From positions 186,001-250,000 of the forward strand of contig NW_025765780.1 in assembly GCF_003918875.1 (NCBI RefSeq): 64,000 nt of DNA, written 5' to 3'. This DNA comes from Haliotis rubra. Lineage: Eukaryota. The translations under genes were made by a program, and so were the position numbers. Shown one piece after another: positions 30,548-64,000 of this stretch. The notes below the pieces were generated by a model. The model did not search any database. It had not been told where the DNA came from and worked only from the letters and a program-made list of their open reading frames with translations. Position 1 is the stretch's first letter; each line of letters starts with the position of its first letter.

Positions 30548-32200
30548 AATAATAATAATAATAATGTCCACTTGTATGGCGCCGTTTCCACACACTAGTG
30601 TATGCTCATGGCGCCCCGTGTGTAAAGCTAAAAATCTGCAGCAATTGTACAAGTCAGTCATTCGTAATATTTCCTGAAAAGATGGGTCTTCAATGAAGAT
30701 TTGAATAAGTCAAGAGATTTTGCTGTTTTGATGGTTATAGGAAGACTGTTCCACAGTGAAGGAGCAGCATAGCTGAATGATCTGTGACCATAGTTCTTGA
30801 GATTGACAGGGGGTGTTGTTAGGAGGAACTGTTGGTGTAATCTCAGCTGTCGTGGTGGTGTGTACACTGAGATGAGTTCAGAGAGGTACTGAGGCGCTAG
30901 GTCATGTAGACACTGGAACACAATGGTCAAGATCTTGAATTCGATTCTGGCTTGGATGGGCAACCAGTGAAGAGACTTTAGGACACGGGTTATGTGAGAT
31001 CTTTTAGATGTTAGGGATACAATGCGGGCTGCAACGTTTTGGATTTTCTGGAGTTTTGTCAAGTGTGCAGAGCTGAGTCCAAACAGAATGCTGTTTGAAT
31101 AGTCCAGTCTAGATAGAACGAGAGACCTGACGAGAGTATGGTCTGCATCTGTTGTTAAGTTATGGCGAATGTTACTGATAGCTCTCAGGTGGAAGAAGCA
31201 GATTCTTGAAAGATGGTTTATCTGAGCATCAAGTGATAGGCCCTGGTCTATGAACACTCCAAGATCTTTTACGGATGGAGCTAGAGTAATTTCTGCATCA
31301 GCTATTGTGATTTTCTCAGTCGTGATTTTGTTCAGACGATGTTTATTGCCGACAAGCATAGCTTCTGTCTTATCATCGTTCATTTTGAGCATCATAGATG
31401 ACATCCAGGATTTGATGGACTTTGTGCAGATAGCTGTCTTCTCTAGGGAATGTTGAATCTGATTCAGAGCAAAAGAGTCTACCAGCTGAGTATCGTCTGC
31501 AAACGAATGATGAGGAGTGTCATACTTATCGGATATTTCGGTCAAGGATGTCATGTAAAGGAGGAAGAGGATGGGCCCCAGAACAGATCCCTGCGGAACT
31601 CCACATGTGAGATCTGCTGTTGTGGATGAAGACTGCTTTATCAAGACTCTCTGAGTGCGTCCTGTCAGATATGATGAAAACCATCCCAATGCCAACCCGG
31701 TGATGCCCATTTGGTGTTCAAGAAGCTTGAGGAGGATGCTGTGGTCAATCGTGTCGAATGCTGCACTCAAGTCTAGCAATACAAGTGATCCAACATTGCC
31801 ACTGTCTACTGAGCATCTGAGGTCATTGAGCACCCTCAGGAGAACTGTTTCTGTGCTGTGTCTGGGCCGGTAGGCGGATTGGAACTTGTAAAATAGTCGA
31901 TTCTGAGTCAGGTGTGATGACAGTCTGATGTAAACTGCTCTTTCAATCAACTTAGAGATGAAGTTAAGGTTGGAGACAGGTCGGAAATTTTTCAGCACAT
32001 TATTATCAAGGTTATCCTTCTTAAGTGATGGTCTGACAACTGCTTCTTTGAAAACCTCTGGAAATATGCCAGACTGTAAGCTAACATTGACAATCTGGGT
32101 GATGACAGGTAGCAAGACATCCATGTTTTCTAGGACAAGTTTACAAGGCAGTGGATCCAGAGGGCATTGCTTGGTCCTTTCACACTCATTCACAATCCGA
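30548..32200 (-). mobile_element. 5'-truncated L2/CR1-group LINE with uninterrupted RT ORF (30658-32193, 511 aa)
   Basis: FRPVSNLNF, QSAYRPRHSTET, LLDLSAAFDTIDH, PQGSVLGP, FADDTQL, SRLDYSN, LHWLPI and FKSSLKTHLF; short 3' UTR ending in (TTA)n. Confidence 0.95.
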
Positions 32201-49473: not shown

Positions 49474-52400
49474 TAGTCCCTGAGCCAGAACTTGAAAATA
49501 TAGAGTTGACTACCAAATTGTGGGCAAACAGCCACTGTGATTTTCATATAGCTCAAGGTATGTAGTTTATGGAATTACGTGATGGGTACCCCCCATGCCC
49601 AGCTATGTGGGTTTTTGGGCGGCCATTTTTAAAGATGGCCGCCATTTTCTTGAATCCGACTATCTGTCTACAAAAGCTGTGCTACAGCTAAAACTGTAAG
49701 CATTAGACATATAAATGTGGGTGAAATATGATCAGTATTCAATTTCCCACAGTTTGATATGTGACCTGTGAGGGTTCGGCATGATTTTTCTTTTAAATTG
49801 GGAAAAATGTATGACAAAATACGATTTCCCCCTAAAAATGCAGATAATTTGTTAATTTCTGGAAAAATAATGATAACAGAGAGGAGAACTTACATAATTT
49901 AGAACGCCTATGCCTCTAAGTATACATTTGTTCCATTTCATATTTAAATCTAAATTAAACTAGAATGTTAATCAGGTTTAGAACGCAGGTCCCATTTTTC
50001 ACTAAATAGTGTCCTTTCAGTACAAATTGACCATCACTCTCTGAAAACAATGACCAAGCTCAAATTGTAAGCTTGAAGTTAGGATAAAATATGTTCAGTA
50101 TGGATTTTTTTGATATGTAGTTTGTGTGGTTCAGCATGATTATTTTTTTTTAAATTGGGGAAGGTGTATGAAAAAATACGATTTCCCCCTAAAATGCAGA
50201 TGGTCTATTGCTCAAGATATCATCACAGGTGTCAGTATGGGGAAAACAGTTGACAGCAAAACACATACTACTTCCTGGGACTACCAAAACTCTCACAGGC
50301 AATATTGAATTAATGAAGATGAATAATTCTGGACATTCCAGTTCCTATTCAGCTTTAGAAGAAATTGATTAAGCATAAACAAACTCCAGCAAGTTTACTG
50401 TTTGGGCATTTGACAACATTGATAGACAAAAGGAAGTTCTATCTGGAGCAGGAACAACGCATCGTGTGAATGCAGTAATTGTCCAGCCACTAGCTATGTC
50501 ATGCACACACCCAAGACCTGTACCAATCATTCAACAAGAGAGTGAACAGGCGTAATATTTAGCCTTCTAACAAGCTTCTACCCATCTACACTGTTGGGAA
50601 AAAAGAAGTGACCCCCTCCCGTGAAACCTGATTCCAATCTTTCTCAAACTCTCCATAACTCAACCATCTCAGCACAACAACACAATCTGCTATGGATCCT
50701 TGATAGAAACTTTGAACCGTCTGATCAGGTGTTAAAGCCATGGACTGGCTTCAATATATTGTGTAGAGAGGAACCTGATGTGACAGCTGACAATTAAGGC
50801 AATTTACCTACAATCAATGCTCCAGCAACAGAAATCTCGACAGTGCAAGAGATTCTTCGACAGTCCATTGCTATTCAGACTCCGCTTGAGTTGCAGAAAC
50901 TTGCAGTGGTTTTGGATCAAGCTCTATTTGCAAAGGCTACTGAGACAGTATGGAGAGACAATGGACGCTTCAGAAAGGTTGTGCTAATGATGGGCAACTT
51001 TCACACAGTTTGGAATTTGATGTCAATTATTGGGAAGAAGTTTGGTGATGCTGGACCTTGCTGTAGAGTCAGAAATAGTTTCTGAAGGATCGATCAAGAA
51101 AGTATTGGAAGGCAAGCACTACAACCGAGCTGATGTGAAGATGTCTTCACAAACTTACTTATGAAGCAATGATGAGATATGATGAGATTGATTTGGCTGG
51201 TATTTGTGAAATTGCTTCAGCAAACATAGCCAAATATCCAACAACTTGACCTTTTCTTTGATGAGATATGTGAGCTCCATCAATGTTTAAGTCATGAAAC
51301 CCAAAGAGAAATGCCTTGAGAGCAGTTCCCGGATGGAAATCTGCAAATTGTTTTGCGCCCTGAAAGGTGACACCTCGCAGCTTTTTTGATGACCTATTTA
51401 AGATTTGGTTGAAATCTTGCTTGGGCTCATATGTGCAGATAGAGAAGACAATTGTTACATCCACCTCGCTTGTATTCGTGACTTGATACCTTGGTGCTTT
51501 GCCACAAACTATGACAAACTATGCAAGATACCTTCCTGTTTAAAATACACAGATGACTCGGCTCCAAGAAGCATCTCCAGAATTGCACAACCATGTTCAT
51601 AACAAAGGATTTTCAGTTCAGTTTAGCAATACAGATGCTTTAGGACAAATTGCTGTTGACCAAGCCACAGAGAAAACGGTAAACAAAGATACACAAATGG
51701 CCGGTGGATCTCCAGGCTTCAGCATGAAACCAGGAACCGTGTTTCGATACTACCTGACAGCAGAGCACAGAGCTACAGCCCTGCGGCAACGTCATCATGA
51801 AGTGTCTTTCAAATCGCTGTGCCATGCTGACCTGGATAAAACATGAACACAGGAGGACAAATGTGACGTCCAAACACTTGTTGACATTCTCTATAGTATT
51901 TGTTGGAAATCATATAGAACTGATATATATATATCATCAGGGATTGCGGATACATCTCACGTATCATTTGATCTTTTGACTGCACACCAGAAAGGACTAG
52001 ACACATACAACAAATTCCAGGATAAACTAGAGAAGGGGGGGGGGGGGAGGCTTTCATGACACAATGAAGAAACACAACTTGAAAACATTCACTGAAATGA
52101 AGAACAAATCACCAAAAGTTCCTGACAAACACATCGTGTGGAAAGCAGACGAGATAATTTGGAAATATGGGGCTAATTGCCCAAGACCGAAATGGAACAT
52201 GAGAAAAGTCCTCTGTCATCCTTTAGGACCATTGCAATGGTCAATGGCGAATGGTGATGAAACACTAAAAAGACCAACAAAGCCATGCTAGCAAGCCATC
52301 TTGAAAGCAAAGTATCTTCAGCTGAAACCACTCCAAAACAAAGAACTGCGCTTCTTGATGCCATGGCAATCCTCCAGAAGCTTCATGGCGACAACCATAC

Positions 52401-54379
52401 TGTAGATGAGATCTCGGATGCTGCTCTGTCACACATGCTGCGTGCTGGTGTAGACTGTACATGTCAGATGTTGTGTTTGATATTTACAGAGAGAAAACAA
52501 TTAGGTCTACAGAACGCAATATTCGCTGCTCAAGAGAAGGAATTTTGTTCACTAAAATAAAACCATAATCATTGTTTGTCACCTATGGCAATCATTGCAT
52601 CAATCTGACAAAAGATGAGCACCAAGTTGTTGAAGATCTTGAATGCAGCCATGAGGAAGCTGATACTCGATTAGCTTTATACATTAAACATGCCGCTGAA
52701 GACAATTCCACACTTTTTGTGTGTAGTGGATGATACTGATGTCTTGATCATATTTCTCATTCTGGCAACAATCAGCAGCAGCAAAGCCTTCATCAGACGT
52801 GGAACCAGAGCTCGTATCAGACTGGTGGATGTAAGCAAATTTGCTCCTGCTCTAGGGGTTGAGGTGTGTTGTGTTCTAGTTGGATTGCATGCATGGACCG
52901 GTTGTGACCCAGTAAGTGCTTTGTCTGTATAAAGAAATCTCAAGGCTTTGAAAATGATTCTCCAGTATCAAAGGTTTATGAGAGTATGTGTGGAACTTGG
53001 AAGCACCTGGAATCTGACAATGGAAAACTTTGATGAAGTTCAAGCTTTTCGCATGCCAGCTGTACTGTAGAAACGCCAAAGTAAATAGAGTCAAAGAACT
53101 TCGCTATCTCATGTTTCATTATAGAGAAGGTGATGCTGATTCAGGACAGTTGCCATCTTGTGTTGATGCTGTCCTCCGTCCAAACTATCAAGCAGCCATT
53201 TGGAGAAACAGTCTCGAGAGGAATACAAGCGTTCCACATTCCACAGATGGACATGGCTAGGAGAAGGATACCAGTGGGAATTTACTGTTCAGCAGTTGGC
53301 AGACTGCTCCGATATGTCAAATTGTAATGACAACCATGATGACAACAACAATAATGATGATGATAACTGCAGTGATGATGATGATAATGATGATGATGAT
53401 GATGATGATTATAGTCGTTAACCACTGGTGACAATCAGAAATATAAAATCAATGTGTAAGGCTTATTACATTGTAAACATCTCATTGACTCAAACCACTT
53501 GTTGTGATTTTGTGACGATTTGGTATTTAGAGAAAGGTATTTGGAAGGAAGCACAATCCATTGAAAAACATTTAAACTTTAAGACAGAACCATAATCATG
53601 TTTCTCTGTTCATCTCTCTAAACATAATGTTTGAATGTAATGTACAAAAATAAATTGTGTATGTCTAAGTTATTGGTATGTCTATTTTTGTAACATTTTT
53701 TCAAAATAAAAATATACAATGATGTACAAATCCTTGCAATTAGATATAAAAATGTGTGAAATTCAATACTGAACAGATTTTATCCTAACAGAACCTACTT
53801 CAAGCTTATAGTTTGACCTGGGTCATTGTTTTTAGAGGCTGATGGTCAAATTTGACTGAAAGGACGCCATTTAGTGAAGACTGGGACCTGCGTTATGAAC
53901 CTGATAAAAAGTATGTTTTAAATTAGATTTAAATATCAAATGGAACCAAATGTATACTTAGGCTTTCTAAATTATTTTAGTTCTCTCTGTTATCAATGTT
54001 TTCCAAGAAATTAACAAATTATCTGCATTTTTAGGGGAAAATCGTATTTTGTCATACATTTTTCCCAATTTTAAAAACAATAATCATGCCGAACCCTCAC
54101 AGATTACATATCAAAATATGGGAAATTGAATACTGATCATATTTCACCCCACATTTATATGTCTAATGCTTATAGTTTAAGCATAGATTTTTTACACAAA
54201 TGGTCAGATTCAAGAAAAGGGCGGCTTTCTATAAAAATGGCCGCCCAATACCCATTTAGCTGGGCATGTGGGATGTCCATCACGTGATTCCATAAACTAC
54301 ATACCTTAAGCTATATGAAAACCATAGTGGCTGTTTGCCCCACAATTTGGTAGTGAAATCTCATCTGGCTCATTGACTA
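49474..54379 (+). mobile_element. 4.9-kb DNA transposon with ~630-bp TIRs and 3-bp (AAT) flanking repeat; decayed large ORF (~50200-53280); superfamily unassigned
   Basis: 49474-~50107 is the inverted copy of ~53759-54379, with termini TAGTC…GACTA. ORF remnants FDNID, GAGTTH, PWTGFN, LPTINAP, DQALF, GNFH, HEEADTRL, DDTDV, LHAWTGCD and NYQAAIWR. Confidence 0.9.
53325..53410. repeat. (GAT)n/(AAC)n microsatellite at the 3' end of the transposon ORF
   Basis: Directly visible. Confidence 0.9.
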
Positions 54380-55920: not shown

Positions 55921-57030
55921 AAAGAAATATAAAGAAGTTGCTAGGTGATACAAACGAACGGAACAAGTAACTTTGCTTCATGCAATTTAAGCATTCTCTT
56001 GAAAATGACAACATCATATCTGATCAATGGTATGATTAATGTTTTATCGTCCTGATGACAAGAACATGGACAAATCCCATAGCTAGTACCTGGAGACAGA
56101 GTTGCATGCCCTAAAATAAGTGTTACAAGCAAGTTGACTATATGACCATCATTTTCCCGTATTCGGGAGTCTCATCTCAGATGTGCAGTTAAACTAAGCA
56201 AGATGTGGCATAGGGGCAAAATAATACGTTCAGCTGGAAGTCAGATGTTGAACTGCCTCAATCGGCTAAGTACGGTTCTACCACTAACTGATAACTGTAG
56301 GTTTGAACCCATTTTCGCCGGATCAGAAGCTGCCGAATTTCCCCACTTTCCAAAATTGAAGAAAGAATTGTATGACAAACTTTTAAAAAATGATGCATTT
56401 TCTGCTTTGGATTTTTCTAACGCAAAGGTGGAAGCTTTCTACACCAGTGGGTCCCAGCATACGGGCGTACAGGCCCGATCAGTTGGGCTTATGTTGAACT
56501 ATAATCAACACAGTCAAACTTCAGAACTCCAATATATGTGCAGCTGGTGCTTGATTTATCGAACGTACTGTTATGGTGAGTTGGTTCATGGCCAATATAT
56601 GTTACAGACGGAGCTTAATGGCAAATGGTATCTCCCTTCTATGTATGTAATTTCCATTATTTAGCATATTGTATAAGAATGGGAAAAACATCGTGTCATC
56701 AGTCACGATCTCTGCTCAATGATCACCAAATGGACCACAACCCGTGTCCACGATATATATACACGTGGAACATTGATAATTATGTTCTGTTCATATTCGT
56801 CTCTCCGGTGTCAATGTTATGGTTGTTACAGTAGTTGGTTCTGTTTGGCTTCACCTTTCTACACATATCCGGATTAGAGGTAATCGATGTGATGACTCAG
56901 CGTATTAAACAACCACCTTATCTAATCGCTACAATCCTACATGACGCTGTTTGCTGCTCCTATTTGCTTTAGGTATCTTCAATGACTTGGAAAAATAATA
57001 TGAGGGCATCAAACCTTACTAAAATAGTGC

Positions 57031-57036
57031 TTTATT
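57031..57036 (-). promoter_or_regulatory. Candidate polyadenylation signal (AATAAA) of neuropeptide gene
   Basis: TTTATT on + strand, ~440 nt downstream of the stop codon. Confidence 0.45.
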
Positions 57037-57472
57037 GTTCACAACAATATGAGTGAATGTACAGTTTTCGAAGATCAGTTCCGACTGTTTAAAACTTTGA
57101 GAATGGTTAAAAGTCTACAATAAGTGCATTCAGCTGAGTAGATGAAGGTTTCACTAAGCGAAATTGATCACACATTAACCCCTTTTGTTACACGAAATAC
57201 TTGTACAAACAAATGTTGTGCTTATGCATTATTATTTTCCTAACTACAAAATGAAATATACGGAGTCCTTATGTGATCAAATATCGACATTTGAATGGAT
57301 GCTTGTATTGACAGTTCATGCACAGTGTTTTGTTGAATTTTGCATATTGCCATCAGTAAAACCTTTGGCAGGAAAAGGTGATATCTACAGAAAGTGGTAC
57401 AAAATGAATTTTTCATTTTTTTCATTCCATTGTATCTCCTGCACAGTCTATTTCAAAGAAAGTCCATGATAT

Positions 57473-58324
57473 CTAACCAAACCGGGCAAACATGCCATAA
57501 CCTATGGGGTCAAACTGCCTCTTCTGTGCCTCTGGAACGCGTTTATATTGGCCTTGGCGAACCCTTGCCACAGCCAACACCTGTTTGAGAAGGTCCGCGA
57601 TGTTGCCACCATCTATGGCCTTCTGAGCGTCCATTTGCCCTTTGTAACCCAATACACGGTACGGGTTGTATCGTTTTCCGAAACTGCCAAAGTTACTTGC
57701 AGCCTCGATGGGATCAAATATTCGTTTCGCGACAAGTTGATCTGACGATTCTTTGTCAGAAAGGCCCGAGTCTGAATCCGCAGAATATTCCTTGTCCTGT
57801 AAAGAACAACATATTATGTCATGTGTTTGTGTTATAAAGCAAGCGTCTTCGTAAAAGAAATTGACCCACAAACAATGTTTGCGAAACACACATAAGACCC
57901 AATCAGTGAGTATAGTGATTTCCTCACTTAATCAGACACTCGCCGTTACTTTCATATATATTTGTGTTACGCTGGATAGGTTAAGACGTGCACATTATCC
58001 GTGCTTGCCATATTCAATATCGGTCATTTACTGTCATCCATAACCTAGTCAACCAAGAAATGCAATCTAGCCATATTATTAAAATAGGACCGACAGGAAT
58101 TGTGTGTCGCGGGCGGCTTTGGCTCGCTTATGGATCATCCGGGTTAGCAGTAGTCGAAAGTAGATTGACTTATATGATGTCTGGATGACTCCCCCAGCCA
58201 TGAGAGCAGTTTATGCTTTATTACACACCTTTGCATCCAACATTGGGTATCCCGCCACAGTGTTCACTAAGCATAATGCCGCCGCGCCGACCATCAGAGA
58301 TGAATAAATAAAACTGAGACCCAT
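57473..58324 (-). CDS. Neuropeptide precursor (pedal peptide/orcokinin-B-like), 139 aa; coding exons 58324-58229 and 57796-57473
   Basis: First coding exon gives MGLSFIYSSLMVGAAALCLVNTVAG-YPMLDAK (signal peptide-like), then a phase-0 intron (AAG|gtgtgt … ctttacag|GAC). The last exon gives an acidic spacer, KR-IFDPIEAASNFGSF-GKR, a 42-aa segment, KR-VPEAQ-KR and QFDPIGYGMFARF-G-stop. An upstream acceptor at 58382 implies a 5' UTR intron. Confidence 0.9.
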
Positions 58325-61300
58325 TTTACTTTCTTGCTTGCTTCTTTGAACCTTTTGTCGGTTGTTTCGGCAGCTATTTGTCTGAAACAGAAAAATAAAG
58401 AATCCAACAAAAGGTATTTAATAGCAAATCTTAAAGGCAATAGTATAATGCCATATAAACATCCATTGCGAAAACGAAGATGTTTTTGTCTTAAAGCTCT
58501 CAGAAATAATCTTTGTCATTTTCCGTTAGTTGAAAGATATGATCGGAAGTTTGGCGGTCGCTATAGTCTTAGCCACAGGCTTTTCATCTTTTTTTTGACC
58601 AACTGAGAGAGAGAAGTGCTAAAAGCAACTGATAACAACGATCTTTAGTTTCAAAGAGTACAATGACGTTTTGGCTATTCCACGTTTCAGGACACGACTT
58701 TGAAACGTGATACTTTTAAATGGCTGATTACATACGCTTAAAGCCTGATTACTATGATGAAGACCGTCTTTTGATGTGAAACTTCAAGTCCATTGGTGTG
58801 AATTTAATTTGGACTCATTGTATGTCTCATGAAAGATTGTTATGCAAGGCTCGTATCGTGCTGTGCGTCGTGCAAATCTTTTAGAATGGACAATTTTGAT
58901 CTCATCCATTTCAAGCAGCACATGCTTCCTGGTTGCTTCATGATTATATATGCATTCATGCATGTTGTTTTAAATGCCAATAATATTAGAACTCTGGATT
59001 CGAAAAGGTGTCTAGCAGGTTCGGACAGACTGTATGTATCCTTTGTCTCCTTGTATACCAGCTGTGTGATCCAGTGAACAGAGCGTCTCTCCGGTGAGAG
59101 GAAGGTGGTAGGGTCGTCAACGTCCTCGCCTTATGGTACTTGTTGACAGCTCGGCTCGGAGTCAGAATACACTGTGTCTTAGTGGAATGTTCACATGAAA
59201 GCATGTTTTAATTGAGTGGGCTGGCTTTATAAAACTGGTAATAGTAGGGGCGAGTGCAACCACGCAGATGTATCAGAGCTAACTGTCAATCAGATCCTGT
59301 TCAAATCTTGGGTTGATTCAAATTGTTTAGTGCTAAACATGCTGCTTGTATTGTATATTCCCCTTACAGTAAAGACGATCGGGATATTGAAAGGGTATTT
59401 CCTAAATACAGCATCTCTGATCAGTACCATGATTCGGTTACGTACTCCAGGAATCCAAGTACTATGTTTTGTATAAAGGTAGTATGATAAGATCTTAGTT
59501 CTAAGGAACCTTCATATTCAGTGCAGCGTCAATCATGGAATAAGTGCATAAGCCACAGTGATAAAATAGAAGTGGGACCAATCATGTCCTTCCAGTGTCA
59601 AAAGATAAATAGATAAATGTTTACAATACGGACATATGCCAAGACACAAGACATCCATCAACGACATCCCCGCCATGTGGCTATAAAATACGACACTAGT
59701 GAACAGACAACAAGTTCTTTACCACAGAGCACACGTGAACAGACAGAACATACCTAAACAACAAGGCACACGTGAACAGACTATTACAATATAACTATGC
59801 TACAAGGTACACGTGTACAGACTATTGCAATATAACTATACTATAATCAATCAGTATCCTGACAACAGACGTTGACAAGAGTGTAACTCGTCACAGCAAG
59901 AACATAAACTAACTTCACGCTACAATGAACGTCAATCTAACTTGTGTGAACAAACTTTTAAGAGAAAGAAGCAGTCAGGTAAAAGAATGTGCCTGACAAA
60001 ACCTTACTCTGTATGCAAAAACTGAACACAATTGGAAGTGTTGAAGTACCCAACTTTAATCTATGCAAGAACCAGTAAAACATCTTGAAAAACCGACGTT
60101 GTGATGAACCTTCGTATGGAACTAGTGACGAAGCAGACGTAAAAGAAAGAGGAAATAATACAAACATAACTGTCCAACTCTAGCTGTCCATATTGTTAGA
60201 AGTAATTACAGGGGTAAAGGCGTGATAGAAGTATGCCTCACACTATCGGCCCGTTTTTCAATTATTTTGTGTCAGCATCAAACCATAACATACTTGAATA
60301 GATACATGTACCGATGCCGGGACTAATTCAATTCTGCCAAGAAGCGGTAAGACTTAACCAACAGACACCACCTGCAGATTCTGCTAAACATCCCCCCGAT
60401 GATCAACACCGAGACGTTTGTTCACAATAAGAAAAAGGGATGGTGATTACTGAAGTTACTGAATGGTGTTAAATTTTCCCTTCTCCCAAATATCTGACGG
60501 TCACGAAGCCCAATGGACTCTATATTCAATAACGTAAGGCAGCACCTGCGGCGACTTGTGGTTTAAGGCCAAGTTAAGACACGTTCTCTGTAACTACATG
60601 TAATTAGACACACGCTTATTAGACATTGTTATTGTCCTTTTAAAGCGATTATGTGAGTTCCGTTCTCACTGTAACTTAAGCTCTTAAGTGGTAAGAGGGA
60701 TAATACGATTAGCTACGATTGGCTAACTCCCCTGTACTAAAATAGCCATGTCTACTGAGATGCTACACACTTTTGTTGTGCATGAACTTGATGTATCGAC
60801 AGTCCGCCTTAATCTTCTCGTAGTTCACCAACATAGACCTTAAATGTTTGCACAATCTTTGTAATATTCAAACTCTCTAATCCATGTTGATTTAAGTTTT
60901 GTTTCTGTCCGAGTGTTCAGTGTTCAGCTCTTATGATCTTGTGTTAACACATTCCATGCTTGTTATTCTGAAGTATCTACGTTGTCCCATCAAAGGCAAA
61001 CAATTGTTCCATATTTACTTTGCTGCACAATGATGAATTTCGACCGTATCACTTCAAACACAGTACCTCAGGGTAGCCTTTGGCGAGTTACAGCCAAGTG
61101 ATATCACAATTTGGTTGGAGGAAGATTTCCTTCAAAATCACGCCGATTTAAAGTACACCTCCCACTGTCATTTACCCCAAGCTATATCAACTGTTGACTT
61201 GTATACTAGAGAATCGGCTGCTCAACCCAGCGGAACCCATCAAGAGACATTCACCGGTACACTACACACAGTCACTGTACACGGATTTGAAACTTTGTTT

Positions 61301-62904
61301 CTTCTTCACATATTTCTACATGAAAATCATTTCGATGAGTATTTGCCAAACAAATCCATCTGTGTATCACGTGACGGGATTATCATATTGTCCTTGTATC
61401 ATACTTCACATCTGTTTTCTTCAGGGGGAGATGCCCATCGGGTATTACACAGATCTTAATTTGTTTAAATGATGTTGAAACAAACAACCGGAAAGATTTC
61501 TAGAGGAATTTAGAGATGCTATTGCTATTAGCAACACGACCTCCGGAATTACGCCCACAAGTGGAAGCAATAGAAAGCGAAGTTGAAACCATCAGCTCTA
61601 AATGCAACCATCTTGAACATGAATTGTGGCAATACGATCTGATTGTCGGACCGGTTAAGTCAGTGTCATATGAAGTGGTGTAATTCTTGTTACTGAAACT
61701 AAGAACACAACGTTTAGTCATTAGCCTGGTCAGTGTCACAACAAATTCATTGACGAAAAGCACTGGTACCTTTTAACAGGACAAAGAGAGACACGCCCTA
61801 TAAGAGTGTCACAACTCAGGAATCTGTGTAACCGAGTGTGTGACCCCACCTGCCTTGTCCCAAGTGTCAGCCAAAGATTGGCACAACTAACTTTACCGTT
61901 GGTTCTGGTCCAGTGGTATGACTCGGCCAGTGTCACGCAAGACGTATAGGGGAGACGTGTGTAGACGAAACAGTCCCTGACAGTACCGTTACGGTGTGAT
62001 GTTAGTTAGTATCTATCCCAACATGTATCGTTTGTGAGCAAGCGTTTATCTGGCTGCAAAGTGGCATTAAATCCTTGCGTTCCACAGATATTAGAACATT
62101 TACTTAAACGGCGACGTCCCTGTACCGCCCGTCATTTATATTGTCTTTTACTATTATCAGTTATGTTTTCCTGTGAGTTGTGAAGCCACGCAATACCGTT
62201 ACACAAACGTCGCACAATGCTCACGTGGACGTGAGTGGACCCTTGCACGTCCACCAGAGCTGTCCAGGCGAAACCTTTACTTATCTGTGAACAGTGGACT
62301 GCCTAGGCTATGAAAATGCTATCTACACCAAGCTAGACTTGCCGAATCATGACGTTGACCTTAGCGTATCGATAAAGCCCAGGTGATGTGCTCCCTTACC
62401 CGGTCGCCTACAGTTCTTTGCCCAGTTGTGCCACGAGTCGGCGAACTATTAATTTGGTAGTTTACTATAGATTCCGTAGATGCACTAGTAGATGGTTGTG
62501 CTGCGTACATGGTGTCACGACCCCTGACAAATATAGATGGTGTTCACATGGTAGCACAGGGGCAGGTTTCATGCTCCCAACACACACACAAACGCCCCCG
62601 GGAATATTTATGTTTAAATAATAACATTATAGTCTGGGTAATGTCTTTATGAATATGTATTGATGGGTGCACAATTAGACATTAAGATCTATTTTATTGA
62701 ACACCATATATAGCACAAATCTATTTTCCGTTCGTGCGAATGATATGAAACTTACGAACTGGATGCCGGTAATCAGGCCGACTGTGTGAGCGCCAGTGAC
62801 AGGGGACATATCATAATTTACTTTGTTATGTTTCAATGTGACCACAAATGTTAAAGACAATGATTTAATTTCTTATCTAAGTCGACTGCAGCGTCATGTG
62901 CAAC

Positions 62905-64000
62905 AACCTTGCAACAACACTCATCCCCTCCGTCCCATTACAACCCCCCTACTACAACATCCATCCCCTCCGCCCCATTACAACCCCCCTACAACACCGC
63001 CCACCCCGTCCGTCCCAATACAGTATCCCTAAAACACCACCCATCCCCTCCGCCCCATTACGACAACAATACTACACCAACCATCCAACAACCCAACAAC
63101 AACACTCGTTCCCTCCGCCCCATCATGGCAACAACCCTTTAACACCACCCACCCCCTCTGTCCCATCACGGCAACAACCCTTTAACACAACACACCCCTC
63201 CGCCCCATCACGGCAACAACCTTTAACACAACACACCCCTCCGCCCCATCACGGCAACAACCTTTAACACAACACACACCCTCCGCCCCATCACGGCAAC
63301 AACCTTTAACACCACACCCACCCTCCGCCCCATCACGGCAACAACCTTTTAACACCACCCCCCCTCCGCCCCATCACGGCAACAACCCTTTAACACAACA
63401 CACCCTCCGCCCCATCACGGCAACAACCTTTAACACAACACACACCCTCCGCCCCATCACGGCAACAACCTTTAACACCACCCACCCCCTCCGCCCCATC
63501 ACGGCAACAACCTTTTAACACCACCACCCCCTCCGCCCCATCACGGCAACAACCCTTTAACACAACACACACCCTCCGCCCCATCACGGCAACAACCTTT
63601 AACACAACACACCCTCTGTCCCATCACGGCAACAACCCTTTAACACAACACACCCCTCCGCCCCATCACGGCAACAACCTTTAACACCACCACCCCCCTC
63701 CGCCCCATCACGGCAACAACCTTTTAACACCACCACCCCCTCCGCCCCATCACGGCAACAACCCTTTAACACAACACACCCCTCCGCCCCATCACGGCAA
63801 CAACCTTTAACACAACACACCCCTCTGTCCCATCACGGCAACAACCCTTTAACACAACACACCCCTCTGCCCCATCACGGCAACAACCTTTAACACAACA
63901 CACCCCTCTGTCCCATCACGGCAACAACCTTTAACACCACCCACCCCTCCGCCCCATCACGGAAACAACCTTTAACATCCCCCTCCGCCCCATCACGGCA
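62905..64000. repeat. Minisatellite, 41-44 bp unit (CCCTCCGCCCCATCACGGCAACAACCTTTAACACAACACAC), runs off window end
   Basis: Directly visible; degenerate at the left edge and homogeneous from ~63150. Confidence 0.97.

What the first reader, a model, noticed from the sequence alone, without database searches (positions are those of the whole stretch)
57473..58324. Compact neuropeptide precursor with FDPI-type peptides, one ending in RFamide
Seen: a two-exon ORF that the ORF track does not recover correctly, with a signal peptide, dibasic KR sites and amidation glycines. Predicted products are IFDPIEAASNFGSF-NH2 and pyroGlu-FDPIGYGMFARF-NH2. Known: an N-terminal FDxI motif with a C-terminal Phe is characteristic of pedal peptide/orcokinin-type peptides, whose precursors usually carry many copies. 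Inference: this gene is atypical in having only two copies, Pro in the FDxI motif, and a terminal peptide blocked at both ends and ending in RFamide. It may be a distinct lineage-specific family, might act on an RFamide-type receptor, and could cross-react with anti-FMRFamide antisera.
Basis: partly seen in the sequence, partly recalled or inferred. Interest (0 to 1): 0.7.

Follow-up and report, generated by a model that had tools for sequence, protein, structure and literature searches.

The report
Abalone two-copy amidated pedal-peptide gene
This is a real, expressed abalone gene for a small neuropeptide precursor whose two amidated peptides belong to the pedal peptide/orcokinin kind; the peptides already sit unnamed in a published abalone ganglion mass-spectrometry table, so it is a useful annotation, not a new kind of system.

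Summary
On the minus strand, 58324..58229 and 57796..57473 join through a GT..AG intron into a 139-aa precursor. It has a hydrophobic N-terminus, KR sites and two Gly-extended peptides, IFDPIEAASNFGSF and QFDPIGYGMFARF. The window is Haliotis rubra, and the model equals RefSeq LOC124273344 isoform X2 ("uncharacterized protein"). Orthologues exist in H. rufescens, H. cracherodii and H. asinina. Spliced transcript contigs from two related organisms skip exactly this intron. Supplementary LC-MS/MS tables of a 2019 H. discus hannai ganglion peptidome (PMC6523705) list IFDPIEAASNFGSF-amide, FDPIGYGMFARF-amide and a propeptide spanning the exon junction, but the authors never named the precursor.

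An exhaustive HMMER search found, outside Haliotis, only gastropod multi-copy amidated pedal-peptide precursors such as Biomphalaria "Pedal peptide 3". Both abalone peptides match their units in register and length, and some of those units also end in RFamide.

It is best read as a two-copy member of the amidated pedal peptide/orcokinin subfamily. A distinct family is not supported. Receptor, function and pyroglutamate are untested. A further 5' exon lies outside the window.

The parts
58229..58381 (-). Exon 2 of the gene (first exon inside the window). It holds 57 nt of 5' leader (58381..58325; read as coding in RefSeq isoform X1) plus codons 1-32 from the ATG at 58324.
   Evidence: The acceptor is tttcag|ACAAAT and the donor is AAG|GTGTGT. 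The X1 contig starts at 58381 and the X5 contig continues 5' into sequence absent from the window. It maps to L001:22817-22969. The ATG context is GTAAAATGG, with A at -3 and G at +4.
58250..58324 (-). Predicted signal peptide, residues 1-25 (MGLSFIYSSLMVGAAALCLVNTVAG), with predicted cleavage before Tyr26.
   Evidence: Hydropathy profile and small residues at -3/-1. This is an inference; SignalP was not available.
57797..58228 (-). Intron of 432 nt, GT..AG, phase 0.
   Evidence: It is skipped in contigs of runs X1 and X5 and present in DNA runs X15 and X17. A peptide spanning the junction was seen by MS in H. discus hannai.
57473..57796 (-). Coding part of the last exon: residues 33-139 plus the TAG stop.
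   Evidence: It is identical to P0006 residues 33-139.
57680..57721 (-). Peptide 1, IFDPIEAASNFGSF (residues 58-71). It is preceded by KR (57727..57722) and followed by Gly-Lys-Arg (57679..57671), giving a C-terminal amide.
   Evidence: One search gives the coordinates. The amidated peptide is in H. discus hannai Table S7 with score 199 and PEP 4e-7. It scores 20.1 bits against the family matrix.
57545..57670 (-). Basic spacer of 42 residues (YNPY...GQY, pI 9.6), followed by KR, VPEAQ and KR (57544..57518).
   Evidence: The fragment AIDGGNIADLLK was seen by MS. Three of the eight positions that vary between species lie here.
57476..57517 (-). Peptide 2, QFDPIGYGMFARF (residues 126-138), plus the amidation Gly139. 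The stop codon follows directly.
   Evidence: FDPIGYGMFARF-amide, DPIGYGMFARF-amide and QFDPIGYGMFAR are in H. discus hannai Tables S6/S7. It scores 18.1 bits against the family matrix.
57030..57472 (-). 3' UTR of about 440 nt, with AATAAA at 57036..57031.
   Evidence: The X1 transcript contig runs about 70 nt past 57100. The polyadenylation signal was found. The exact 3' end was not determined.

Best explanation
This is the Haliotis rubra gene LOC124273344, a three-exon neuropeptide precursor gene expressed in the nervous system. The 139-aa prepropeptide enters the secretory pathway through an N-terminal signal peptide. Prohormone convertases cut it at four KR sites, carboxypeptidase trims the basic residues, and peptidylglycine alpha-amidating monooxygenase converts the C-terminal Gly. 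The products are IFDPIEAASNFGSF-NH2 and (Q)FDPIGYGMFARF-NH2, plus an acidic N-terminal propeptide and a basic spacer.

By sequence, length, register and processing, the two peptides belong to the amidated branch of the pedal peptide/orcokinin family. That branch is called Pedal peptide 3 in Biomphalaria and 'pedal peptide' in Limax and Plakobranchus, where the precursors carry 10-40 copies. The abalone gene is a two-copy member of that branch. It is possibly abalone's only source of such peptides.

Shown: the splice, the transcripts, the peptides and their amidation (in a sister species), and the family-level similarity. Inferred: the signal cleavage site, pyroglutamate formation, release as a neuromodulator acting on a still unidentified receptor, and a myo- or ciliomodulatory role by analogy with other family members.
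For: Gene and splice. RefSeq models exist in four Haliotis species.

Peptides: the supplementary tables of PMC6523705 assign six peptides to one transcript, TBIU004603. These are IFDPIEAASNFGSF-amide, FDPIGYGMFARF-amide, DPIGYGMFARF-amide, QFDPIGYGMFAR (positions 125-136 of a 138-aa product), AIDGGNIADLLK, and AKDKEYSAESESGLSDKESSDQLVA, which crosses the exon junction and ends at the KR site. They were detected in cerebral, pleuro-pedal and branchial ganglion samples.

Family: an exhaustive phmmer search of 1.84 billion representatives returned four hits outside Haliotis. Three are multi-copy FD[RS]I...F-Gly-KR precursors: Pomacea (E 5.5e-12, 17 stretches), an ENA contig protein (3.4e-6) and Bradybaena (6.2e-6). 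The fourth is a spurious TPR protein. P0013 contains four MS-verified Biomphalaria Pep 3 peptides. Family units are 13-14 residues, 91 of 98 are Gly-extended and nearly all end in Phe. The abalone peptides are 14 and 13 residues and align without gaps (FD.I..AS.F..F and FD.IG...F..F). Matrix scores are z 5.6 and 5.7 against shuffles, and with FDxI fixed only 82 and 88 of 100,000 shuffles reach them.

Gene structure and conservation: a phase-0 intron separates the signal-peptide exon from a single peptide-coding exon in both the abalone gene and Biomphalaria Pep 3. Both peptides and all processing sites are invariant in the Haliotis sequences compared, and all 8 variable positions lie elsewhere.
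Against: The copy number (2) is far below the 10-40 copies of the matched precursors. Peptide 2 scores below the range of the family's own 12-residue cores (18.1 versus 28-33 bits, though that matrix is dominated by one species). Similarity is confined to two short units, so convergence cannot be excluded and orthology is unproven: no synteny test was possible. The shared intron layout is common among neuropeptide genes. Having 0 of 8 variable sites in the peptides is not significant on its own (about 0.18 by chance, my arithmetic). MS identifications other than peptide 1 have modest confidence (PEP 0.012-0.045), come from a sister species and were read from supplementary tables. No receptor or bioactivity data exist.
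Confidence: 0.8

Rival explanations
1. It is an independent, Haliotidae-restricted neuropeptide family whose FDPI...F-amide peptides resemble pedal peptides only by convergence or by very old divergence.
For: Full-length relatives were found only in Haliotis. The 42-residue spacer and the N-terminal propeptide match nothing else. Both copies carry Pro in FDxI, which is rare elsewhere (1 of 98 units). There are only two copies.
Against: Both peptides fit the amidated pedal-peptide unit in register, length, C-terminal Phe and Gly-KR processing. The only non-Haliotis HMMER hits of biological sense are that family. The absence of low-copy relatives elsewhere is uninformative, because a two-copy relative with a diverged spacer would give a far weaker whole-protein score and would probably fall below the E-value cut-off in a library of 1.84 billion proteins.
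Confidence: 0.14
2. It is a member of an RFamide family in the strict sense (FMRFamide/LFRFamide-related, or CCK/sulfakinin-type, given that QFD..YG.M..RFamide recalls insect sulfakinin). Peptide 2 would be the functional product and peptide 1 a by-product.
For: Peptide 2 ends in RF-Gly. It has a superficial likeness to sulfakinin (my recollection, not a tool result). NPFF and cholecystokinin precursor clusters appear among the language-model neighbours, at noise-level scores.
Against: Molluscan CCK/SK peptides in the same paper's reference set read ...DFDYGLGGGRF-Gly and ...GDYSLGGGRF-Gly. Peptide 2 has no acidic residue before Tyr and no GGRF. Peptide 1 is not an RFamide, yet it shares the FDPI head with peptide 2 and is the best-supported MS product (score 199, PEP 4e-7). 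There is no repeated short xxRF-Gly unit as in FMRFamide/LFRFamide precursors. No RFamide family was hit by HMMER or Pfam.
Confidence: 0.04
3. It is not a neuropeptide gene. It would be a chance ORF pair or a secreted protein with another role.
For: There is no Pfam family, and RefSeq names it only 'uncharacterized protein'.
Against: Spliced transcripts exist in two organisms. Processed and amidated peptides were detected in ganglia. The gene is conserved across Haliotis. The matrix statistics also argue against chance.
Confidence: 0.01

Closest known systems
Amidated gastropod pedal peptide precursors: Biomphalaria glabrata Pedal peptide 3 (LOC106074337, P0013; PMC5455113), Limax valentianus 'pedal peptide' (1487 aa, 42 peptides; PMC6085721), Plakobranchus 'pedal peptide protein' (P0014), and unnamed Pomacea (P0008), Bradybaena (P0010) and Elysia (P0015) proteins
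   Same: The peptides have the form x-F-D-x-I-...-F-x-x-F-NH2, are 13-14 residues long, and are flanked by KR with a Gly amide donor. Some copies end in RFamide. There is a signal peptide, and a phase-0 intron lies between the signal exon and a single peptide exon (Biomphalaria). HMMER similarity is significant.
   Different: There are two copies instead of 10-42. Pro replaces the usual Arg or Ser in FDxI in both copies. A 42-residue basic spacer lies between the copies in place of short acidic spacers. The precursor is 139 aa instead of 550-1500 aa. Orthology is not established.
Classical molluscan pedal peptide (Aplysia Pep; Haliotis discus hannai pedal peptide A, e.g. PFDSISGSSAFSDFA)
   Same: It shares the xFDSI head, an aromatic residue near the C-terminus, dibasic processing and expression in ganglia.
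   Different: Classical peptides are 15 residues, end in ...GFA...GFM or ...SFN and are mostly not amidated. Their precursors are multi-copy. Abalone has separate genes for PP-A, PP-B and PP-C.
Arthropod orcokinins, echinoderm PP/OK-type peptides (starfish myorelaxant peptide) and nematode NLP-14/15
   Same: They belong to the same superfamily as defined in the literature (PMC5656890 and PMC5814872, abstracts). The N-terminal FD/LD-x-I/L motif with C-terminal aromatic residues is from my own knowledge.
   Different: The phyla are distant. No direct sequence test was run here. Those peptides are generally not amidated (my own knowledge).
CCK/sulfakinin-type peptides
   Same: They have a C-terminal RFamide and come from a two-peptide precursor.
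   Different: The abalone peptide has no D-Y sulfation motif and no GGRF or HMRF tail, and peptide 1 is not an RFamide.

Membership tests
Pedal peptide/orcokinin family, amidated gastropod branch (Pep 3-type) | Secretory precursor with an N-terminal signal peptide | tested here: inconclusive
   The hydrophobic core covers residues 5-20 and V-A-G precedes Tyr26. MS-detected processed peptides imply passage through the secretory pathway. No dedicated predictor was available.
Pedal peptide/orcokinin family, amidated gastropod branch (Pep 3-type) | Peptide units bounded by dibasic sites | tested here: met
   KR precedes both peptides, GKR follows peptide 1 and G-stop follows peptide 2. MS peptides end exactly at these sites.
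Pedal peptide/orcokinin family, amidated gastropod branch (Pep 3-type) | x-F-D-x-I head and C-terminal Phe at fixed spacing (12-13 residues from the F of FD), 13-14 residues in all | tested here: met
   Of the 91 Gly-extended family units, the FD-to-end core is 13 residues in 65 and 12 residues in 19. Peptide 1 has a core of 13 and peptide 2 a core of 12. Scores are 20.1 and 18.1 bits, z 5.6 and 5.7.
Pedal peptide/orcokinin family, amidated gastropod branch (Pep 3-type) | C-terminal Gly giving an alpha-amide | tested here: met
   Gly72 and Gly139. 'Amidated (C-term)' identifications appear in PMC6523705 Table S7. 91 of 98 family units are Gly-extended.
Pedal peptide/orcokinin family, amidated gastropod branch (Pep 3-type) | Many tandem copies per precursor | tested here: not met
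   There are two copies only, and no further FDxI-type coding sequence exists in 64 kb. Copy number is a typical trait, not a criterion of homology.
Pedal peptide/orcokinin family, amidated gastropod branch (Pep 3-type) | Statistically significant sequence similarity to family members | tested here: met
   phmmer E-values were 5.5e-12, 3.4e-6 and 6.2e-6 against a 1.84-billion-protein library. The values are inflated by repeats in the targets.
Pedal peptide/orcokinin family, amidated gastropod branch (Pep 3-type) | Orthology (conserved synteny or phylogeny) with Pep 3-type genes | not testable with these tools
   No molluscan genome collection is searchable here. 10-kb flanks hold no informative neighbours. 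The Pomacea locus is not on record.
Pedal peptide/orcokinin family, amidated gastropod branch (Pep 3-type) | Shared cognate receptor | not testable with these tools
   No paper naming a pedal peptide or orcokinin receptor was found (zero occurrences of either phrase).
CCK/sulfakinin | Acidic residue-Tyr (sulfation) motif followed by G..(G)RF-amide | tested here: not met
   Peptide 2 reads ...IGYGMFARF-Gly, with Gly before Tyr and no GGRF or HMRF. Compare Pinctada ...DFDYGLGGGRF-Gly.
FMRFamide / LFRFamide-related peptides | Several short (4-8 residue) x-x-R-F-Gly units between basic sites | tested here: not met
   There is one RF-Gly end on a 13-residue peptide whose head is shared with a non-RFamide sister peptide.

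The most novel reading that the evidence does not exclude
The abalone lineage reduced an amidated pedal-peptide gene to two diverged copies, and one copy (QFDPIGYGMFARF-NH2) has been recruited as a ligand of an RFamide-type receptor or FaNaC-type channel while its sister peptide keeps the ancestral pedal-peptide receptor. One small gene would then feed two signalling systems and would give a tractable two-ligand entry point for finding the still unknown PP/OK receptor.
Probability: 0.08. Interest if true: 0.6.

Novelty: new member of a known kind. Interest (0 to 1): 0.35.

Why it matters
The work names an abalone gene that RefSeq calls "uncharacterized" in four species, and whose abundant ganglionic peptides sit unannotated in a published peptidome. 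It therefore adds one precursor to the abalone neuropeptide catalogue, which aquaculture research on maturation and spawning draws on. It also shows that the amidated pedal-peptide branch can exist as a minimal two-copy gene. A precursor with just two distinct ligands, one ending in RFamide, is a convenient reagent set for receptor deorphanisation in a family for which I found no named receptor. It is a reminder that some pan-RFamide or anti-FMRFamide staining in gastropods may come from pedal-peptide-type products, a point already made for Limax (PMC6085721). It does not reveal a new kind of signalling system.

Tried and rejected
- Pfam scan of both exons: no family at E up to 10.
- First literature search: 'FDPI' returned only acronym noise. 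A second search without it showed that none of the peptide strings occurs in the main text of any held paper.
- H. laevigata genome paper: no supplements are held, so its 45-precursor list could not be checked.
- Sulfakinin/CCK idea (QFD..YG.M..RFamide): rejected on motif grounds and because peptide 1 shares the FDPI head.
- P0011, a TPR repeat protein at E 9e-4: spurious low-complexity or repeat match.
- ESM Atlas: only generic small neuropeptide-precursor neighbours at scores that shuffled proteins also reach.
- Search for the 5' exon in the window using the X5 loose end: no match. It is explained by exon 1 lying outside the window. Organism B seems to use a different 5' exon from RefSeq X1, which I did not resolve.
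- Synteny: no neighbouring genes within 10 kb in H. rubra, one unannotated neighbour in Biomphalaria, and the Pomacea locus is not on record.
- Word-index searches with the Pomacea and Biomphalaria precursors found no Haliotis long amidated precursor. They also missed abalone's classical PP-A, so this is a weak negative.
- Conservation as evidence of selection: all 8 variable sites lie outside the peptides, but this is not significant alone.

Full report
**1. What is in the sequence**

Read on the minus strand, an ATG at 58324 opens 32 codons (MGLSF...PMLDAK) that end at a GT donor (AAG|GTGTGT, last exon base 58229). A polypyrimidine tract and AG (ttctttacag|GACAAG) open a second coding block at 57796. 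This block runs 107 codons to TAG at 57475..57473. The intron is 432 nt and phase 0.

The product has:
- a hydrophobic N-terminus with V-A-G before Tyr26;
- an acidic propeptide;
- KR-IFDPIEAASNFGSF-GKR;
- a 42-residue basic spacer;
- KR-VPEAQ-KR;
- QFDPIGYGMFARF-G followed directly by the stop codon.

The window has no N runs.

**2. Identity of the locus**

The window is 100% identical to Haliotis rubra assembly GCA_003918875.1, contig QXJH01000018.1. The two exon translations together equal the stored RefSeq protein P0006 (XP_046564533.1, LOC124273344 isoform X2, "uncharacterized protein").

RefSeq carries the same gene in H. rufescens and H. cracherodii (138 and 160 aa) and in H. asinina (139 and 161 aa). 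A Logan-derived exon ORF (P0007) carries the SAESES variant also seen in H. discus hannai peptides.

Exons were searched by reference. Where a full-length query was needed I used the stored protein P0006. The only joining was an equality check inside a script.

**3.

The ATG exon begins at an acceptor at 58381 (tttcag|ACAAAT). RefSeq's gene span is 13.7 kb. The X1 first exon (..CCCATGGTATCA|GTAAGT) lies about 7.2 kb beyond the window's end.

Isoform X1 adds 22 residues from an upstream in-frame ATG in weaker context (C at -3). The MGLSF ATG has A at -3 and G at +4. The extension varies at 5 of 22 positions between species, against 8 of 139 for the main frame. The H. discus hannai peptide numbering fits the short form. 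I take the short form as the functional product, which is an inference.

An AATAAA at 57036 fits the end of a transcript contig.

**4. Expression and splice**

Contigs of four coded runs were laid on 57100-63000. Runs X1 (organism A, about 2% divergent) and X5 (organism B, about 9% divergent) each hold one contig that skips 57796..58228 exactly. The skipped ends are CT..AC on the + strand, which is GT..AG on the gene strand.

The large runs X15 and X17 read through the intron, as genomic DNA would. Contigs cannot give expression level or strand.

**5. The peptides have been seen**

The supplementary tables of the H. discus hannai ganglion peptidome (PMC6523705) assign these peptides to a single transcript, TBIU004603:

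| Peptide | Score / PEP or position |
|---|---|
| IFDPIEAASNFGSF, amidated | score 199, PEP 4e-7, many samples |
| FDPIGYGMFARF, amidated | score 98, PEP 0.012 |
| DPIGYGMFARF, amidated | PEP 0.026 |
| QFDPIGYGMFAR | residues 125-136 |
| AIDGGNIADLLK | PEP 0.038 |
| AKDKEYSAESESGLSDKESSDQLVA | PEP 0.045 |

The last peptide crosses the exon junction and stops at the KR site. Samples are cerebral, pleuro-pedal and branchial ganglia.

The precursor sequence is absent from the authors' file of named precursors and from their "MAP" file. Their 42 precursors were found by BLAST with known queries, and MAPs were named only if differentially abundant. That explains the omission.

The pyroglutamate form was not among the entries I could read. 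The stored Table S7 is cut before the Q entries.

**6. Family**

Pfam gives nothing, and the word-index search found only Haliotis orthologues. The "lineage-specific" claim rests on absence, so I ran the exhaustive phmmer search.

Outside Haliotis it returned four proteins:
- Pomacea canaliculata, 1083 aa, 17 matched stretches, E 5.5e-12;
- an ENA contig protein, 210 aa, E 3.4e-6;
- Bradybaena similaris, 551 aa, E 6.2e-6;
- a TPR protein that is spurious.

The first three are tandem arrays of KR-x-FD[RS]I-...-F-x-x-F-G-KR. Further searches added Biomphalaria LOC106074337, Plakobranchus "pedal peptide protein" and an Elysia protein. The Biomphalaria protein contains four peptides that PMC5455113 sequenced by MS as Pedal peptide 3. 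The Limax "pedal peptide" (1487 aa, 42 peptides, two of them RFamides, e.g. GFDRISGASDFGGF-amide) is the same kind (PMC6085721).

Statistics on the family units:
- Across six precursors, 91 of 98 units are Gly-extended. They are 13-14 residues long and nearly all end in Phe.
- RF-Gly ends occur in three species. Pro in FDxI occurs once.
- The abalone peptides are 14 and 13 residues and align without gaps.
- Position-matrix scores are 20.1 and 18.1 bits. 0 and 1 of 100,000 full shuffles reach them.
- With FDxI held fixed, 82 and 88 of 100,000 shuffles reach them.
- They are the single best k-mers among all six-frame k-mers of the window.
- Peptide 1 falls at the low end of the family's own score range. 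Peptide 2 falls below it.

Biomphalaria Pep 3 and the abalone gene share a phase-0 intron between a signal-peptide exon and one exon holding all copies. This is consistent with common descent but is a common layout.

**7. What is and is not unusual**

Amidation, the 13-14-residue length and an occasional RFamide end are normal for this branch. Two copies, Pro in both heads and a long basic spacer are the real peculiarities.

Abalone's named pedal-peptide genes (PP-A PFDSI...GFA, PP-B ...SSFY, PP-C PIDSIGSGFI) are non-amidated types. No FDRI-type peptide appears in the stored abalone tables, and no long amidated precursor from Haliotis was retrieved (a weak negative). The gene may therefore be abalone's representative of the branch, but orthology is untested.

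Absence of low-copy relatives in other molluscs means little. A two-copy relative with a diverged spacer would score too low to pass the E-value cut-off in a library of that size.

**8. Rivals**

A CCK/sulfakinin or FMRFamide-type reading fails on motifs and on the shared head of the two peptides. The language-model neighbours are generic small neuropeptide precursors at noise-level scores. A chance ORF is excluded.

**9. Mechanism**

- Shown: transcription with the stated splice, cleavage at the KR sites, and C-terminal amidation of both peptides (in a sister species).
- Inferred: signal cleavage after Gly25, partial pyroglutamate formation, and release as a neuromodulator.
- Unknown: the receptor. 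No paper with the phrases "pedal peptide receptor" or "orcokinin receptor" was found.
- By analogy only: roles of pedal peptides in foot muscle and locomotion (cited in PMC6778792) and of the Limax precursor in olfactory centres.

**10. Verdict**

This is a correct and careful first-stage observation. The gene is real and its products are verified. It is a two-copy member of a known neuropeptide family that databases and one peptidome paper left unnamed. It has modest interest as an annotation and as a handy ligand pair for receptor work, and it is not a new kind of system.

Noticed in passing
window 63111-64000 (continues beyond the window end; L001:16983-17198): A 42-bp C-rich minisatellite with at least 21.5 copies at about 90% identity, flanked by a related 40-bp array at 62912-63061. 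It lies inside intron 1 of the neuropeptide gene.
   Followed up: partly
window 49502-50083 and 53794-54361: Two segments of about 580 bp, 85.6% identical in inverted orientation (BLAST). They fit the long terminal inverted repeats of the DNA transposon noted earlier by the scan (s1-339818, 49474-54379).
   Followed up: partly
window ~31720-31800, minus strand: The translated motif ...LLDLSAAFDTIDHSILLKLLEHQMGIT resembles the conserved core of retroelement reverse transcriptases (my recollection). It is probably a retrotransposon fragment.
   Followed up: no
L001:10001-10009 (about 7.2 kb beyond window position 64000) and window 58325-58381: RefSeq isoform X1 starts at an upstream ATG 9 nt before the exon 1 donor and reads the 5' leader in frame, adding 22 poorly conserved residues ahead of the signal peptide. 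This is probably an annotation by-product of an in-frame uATG.
   Followed up: partly
window 58382-58384 (run X5 contig): The organism B transcript contig continues 5' of exon 2 for about 296 nt. That sequence matches neither the window nor the H. rubra X1 first exon (no match within 6 substitutions in L001), which suggests an alternative or diverged first exon.
   Followed up: partly
PMC6523705 Table S7/Table 3 (H. discus hannai), not in this window: Another unnamed amidated peptide, (ST)IFDRMGRFY-amide (the authors' MAP-7, transcript TBIU032784), also has an FD-x-[IM] head and may deserve the same family check.
   Followed up: no
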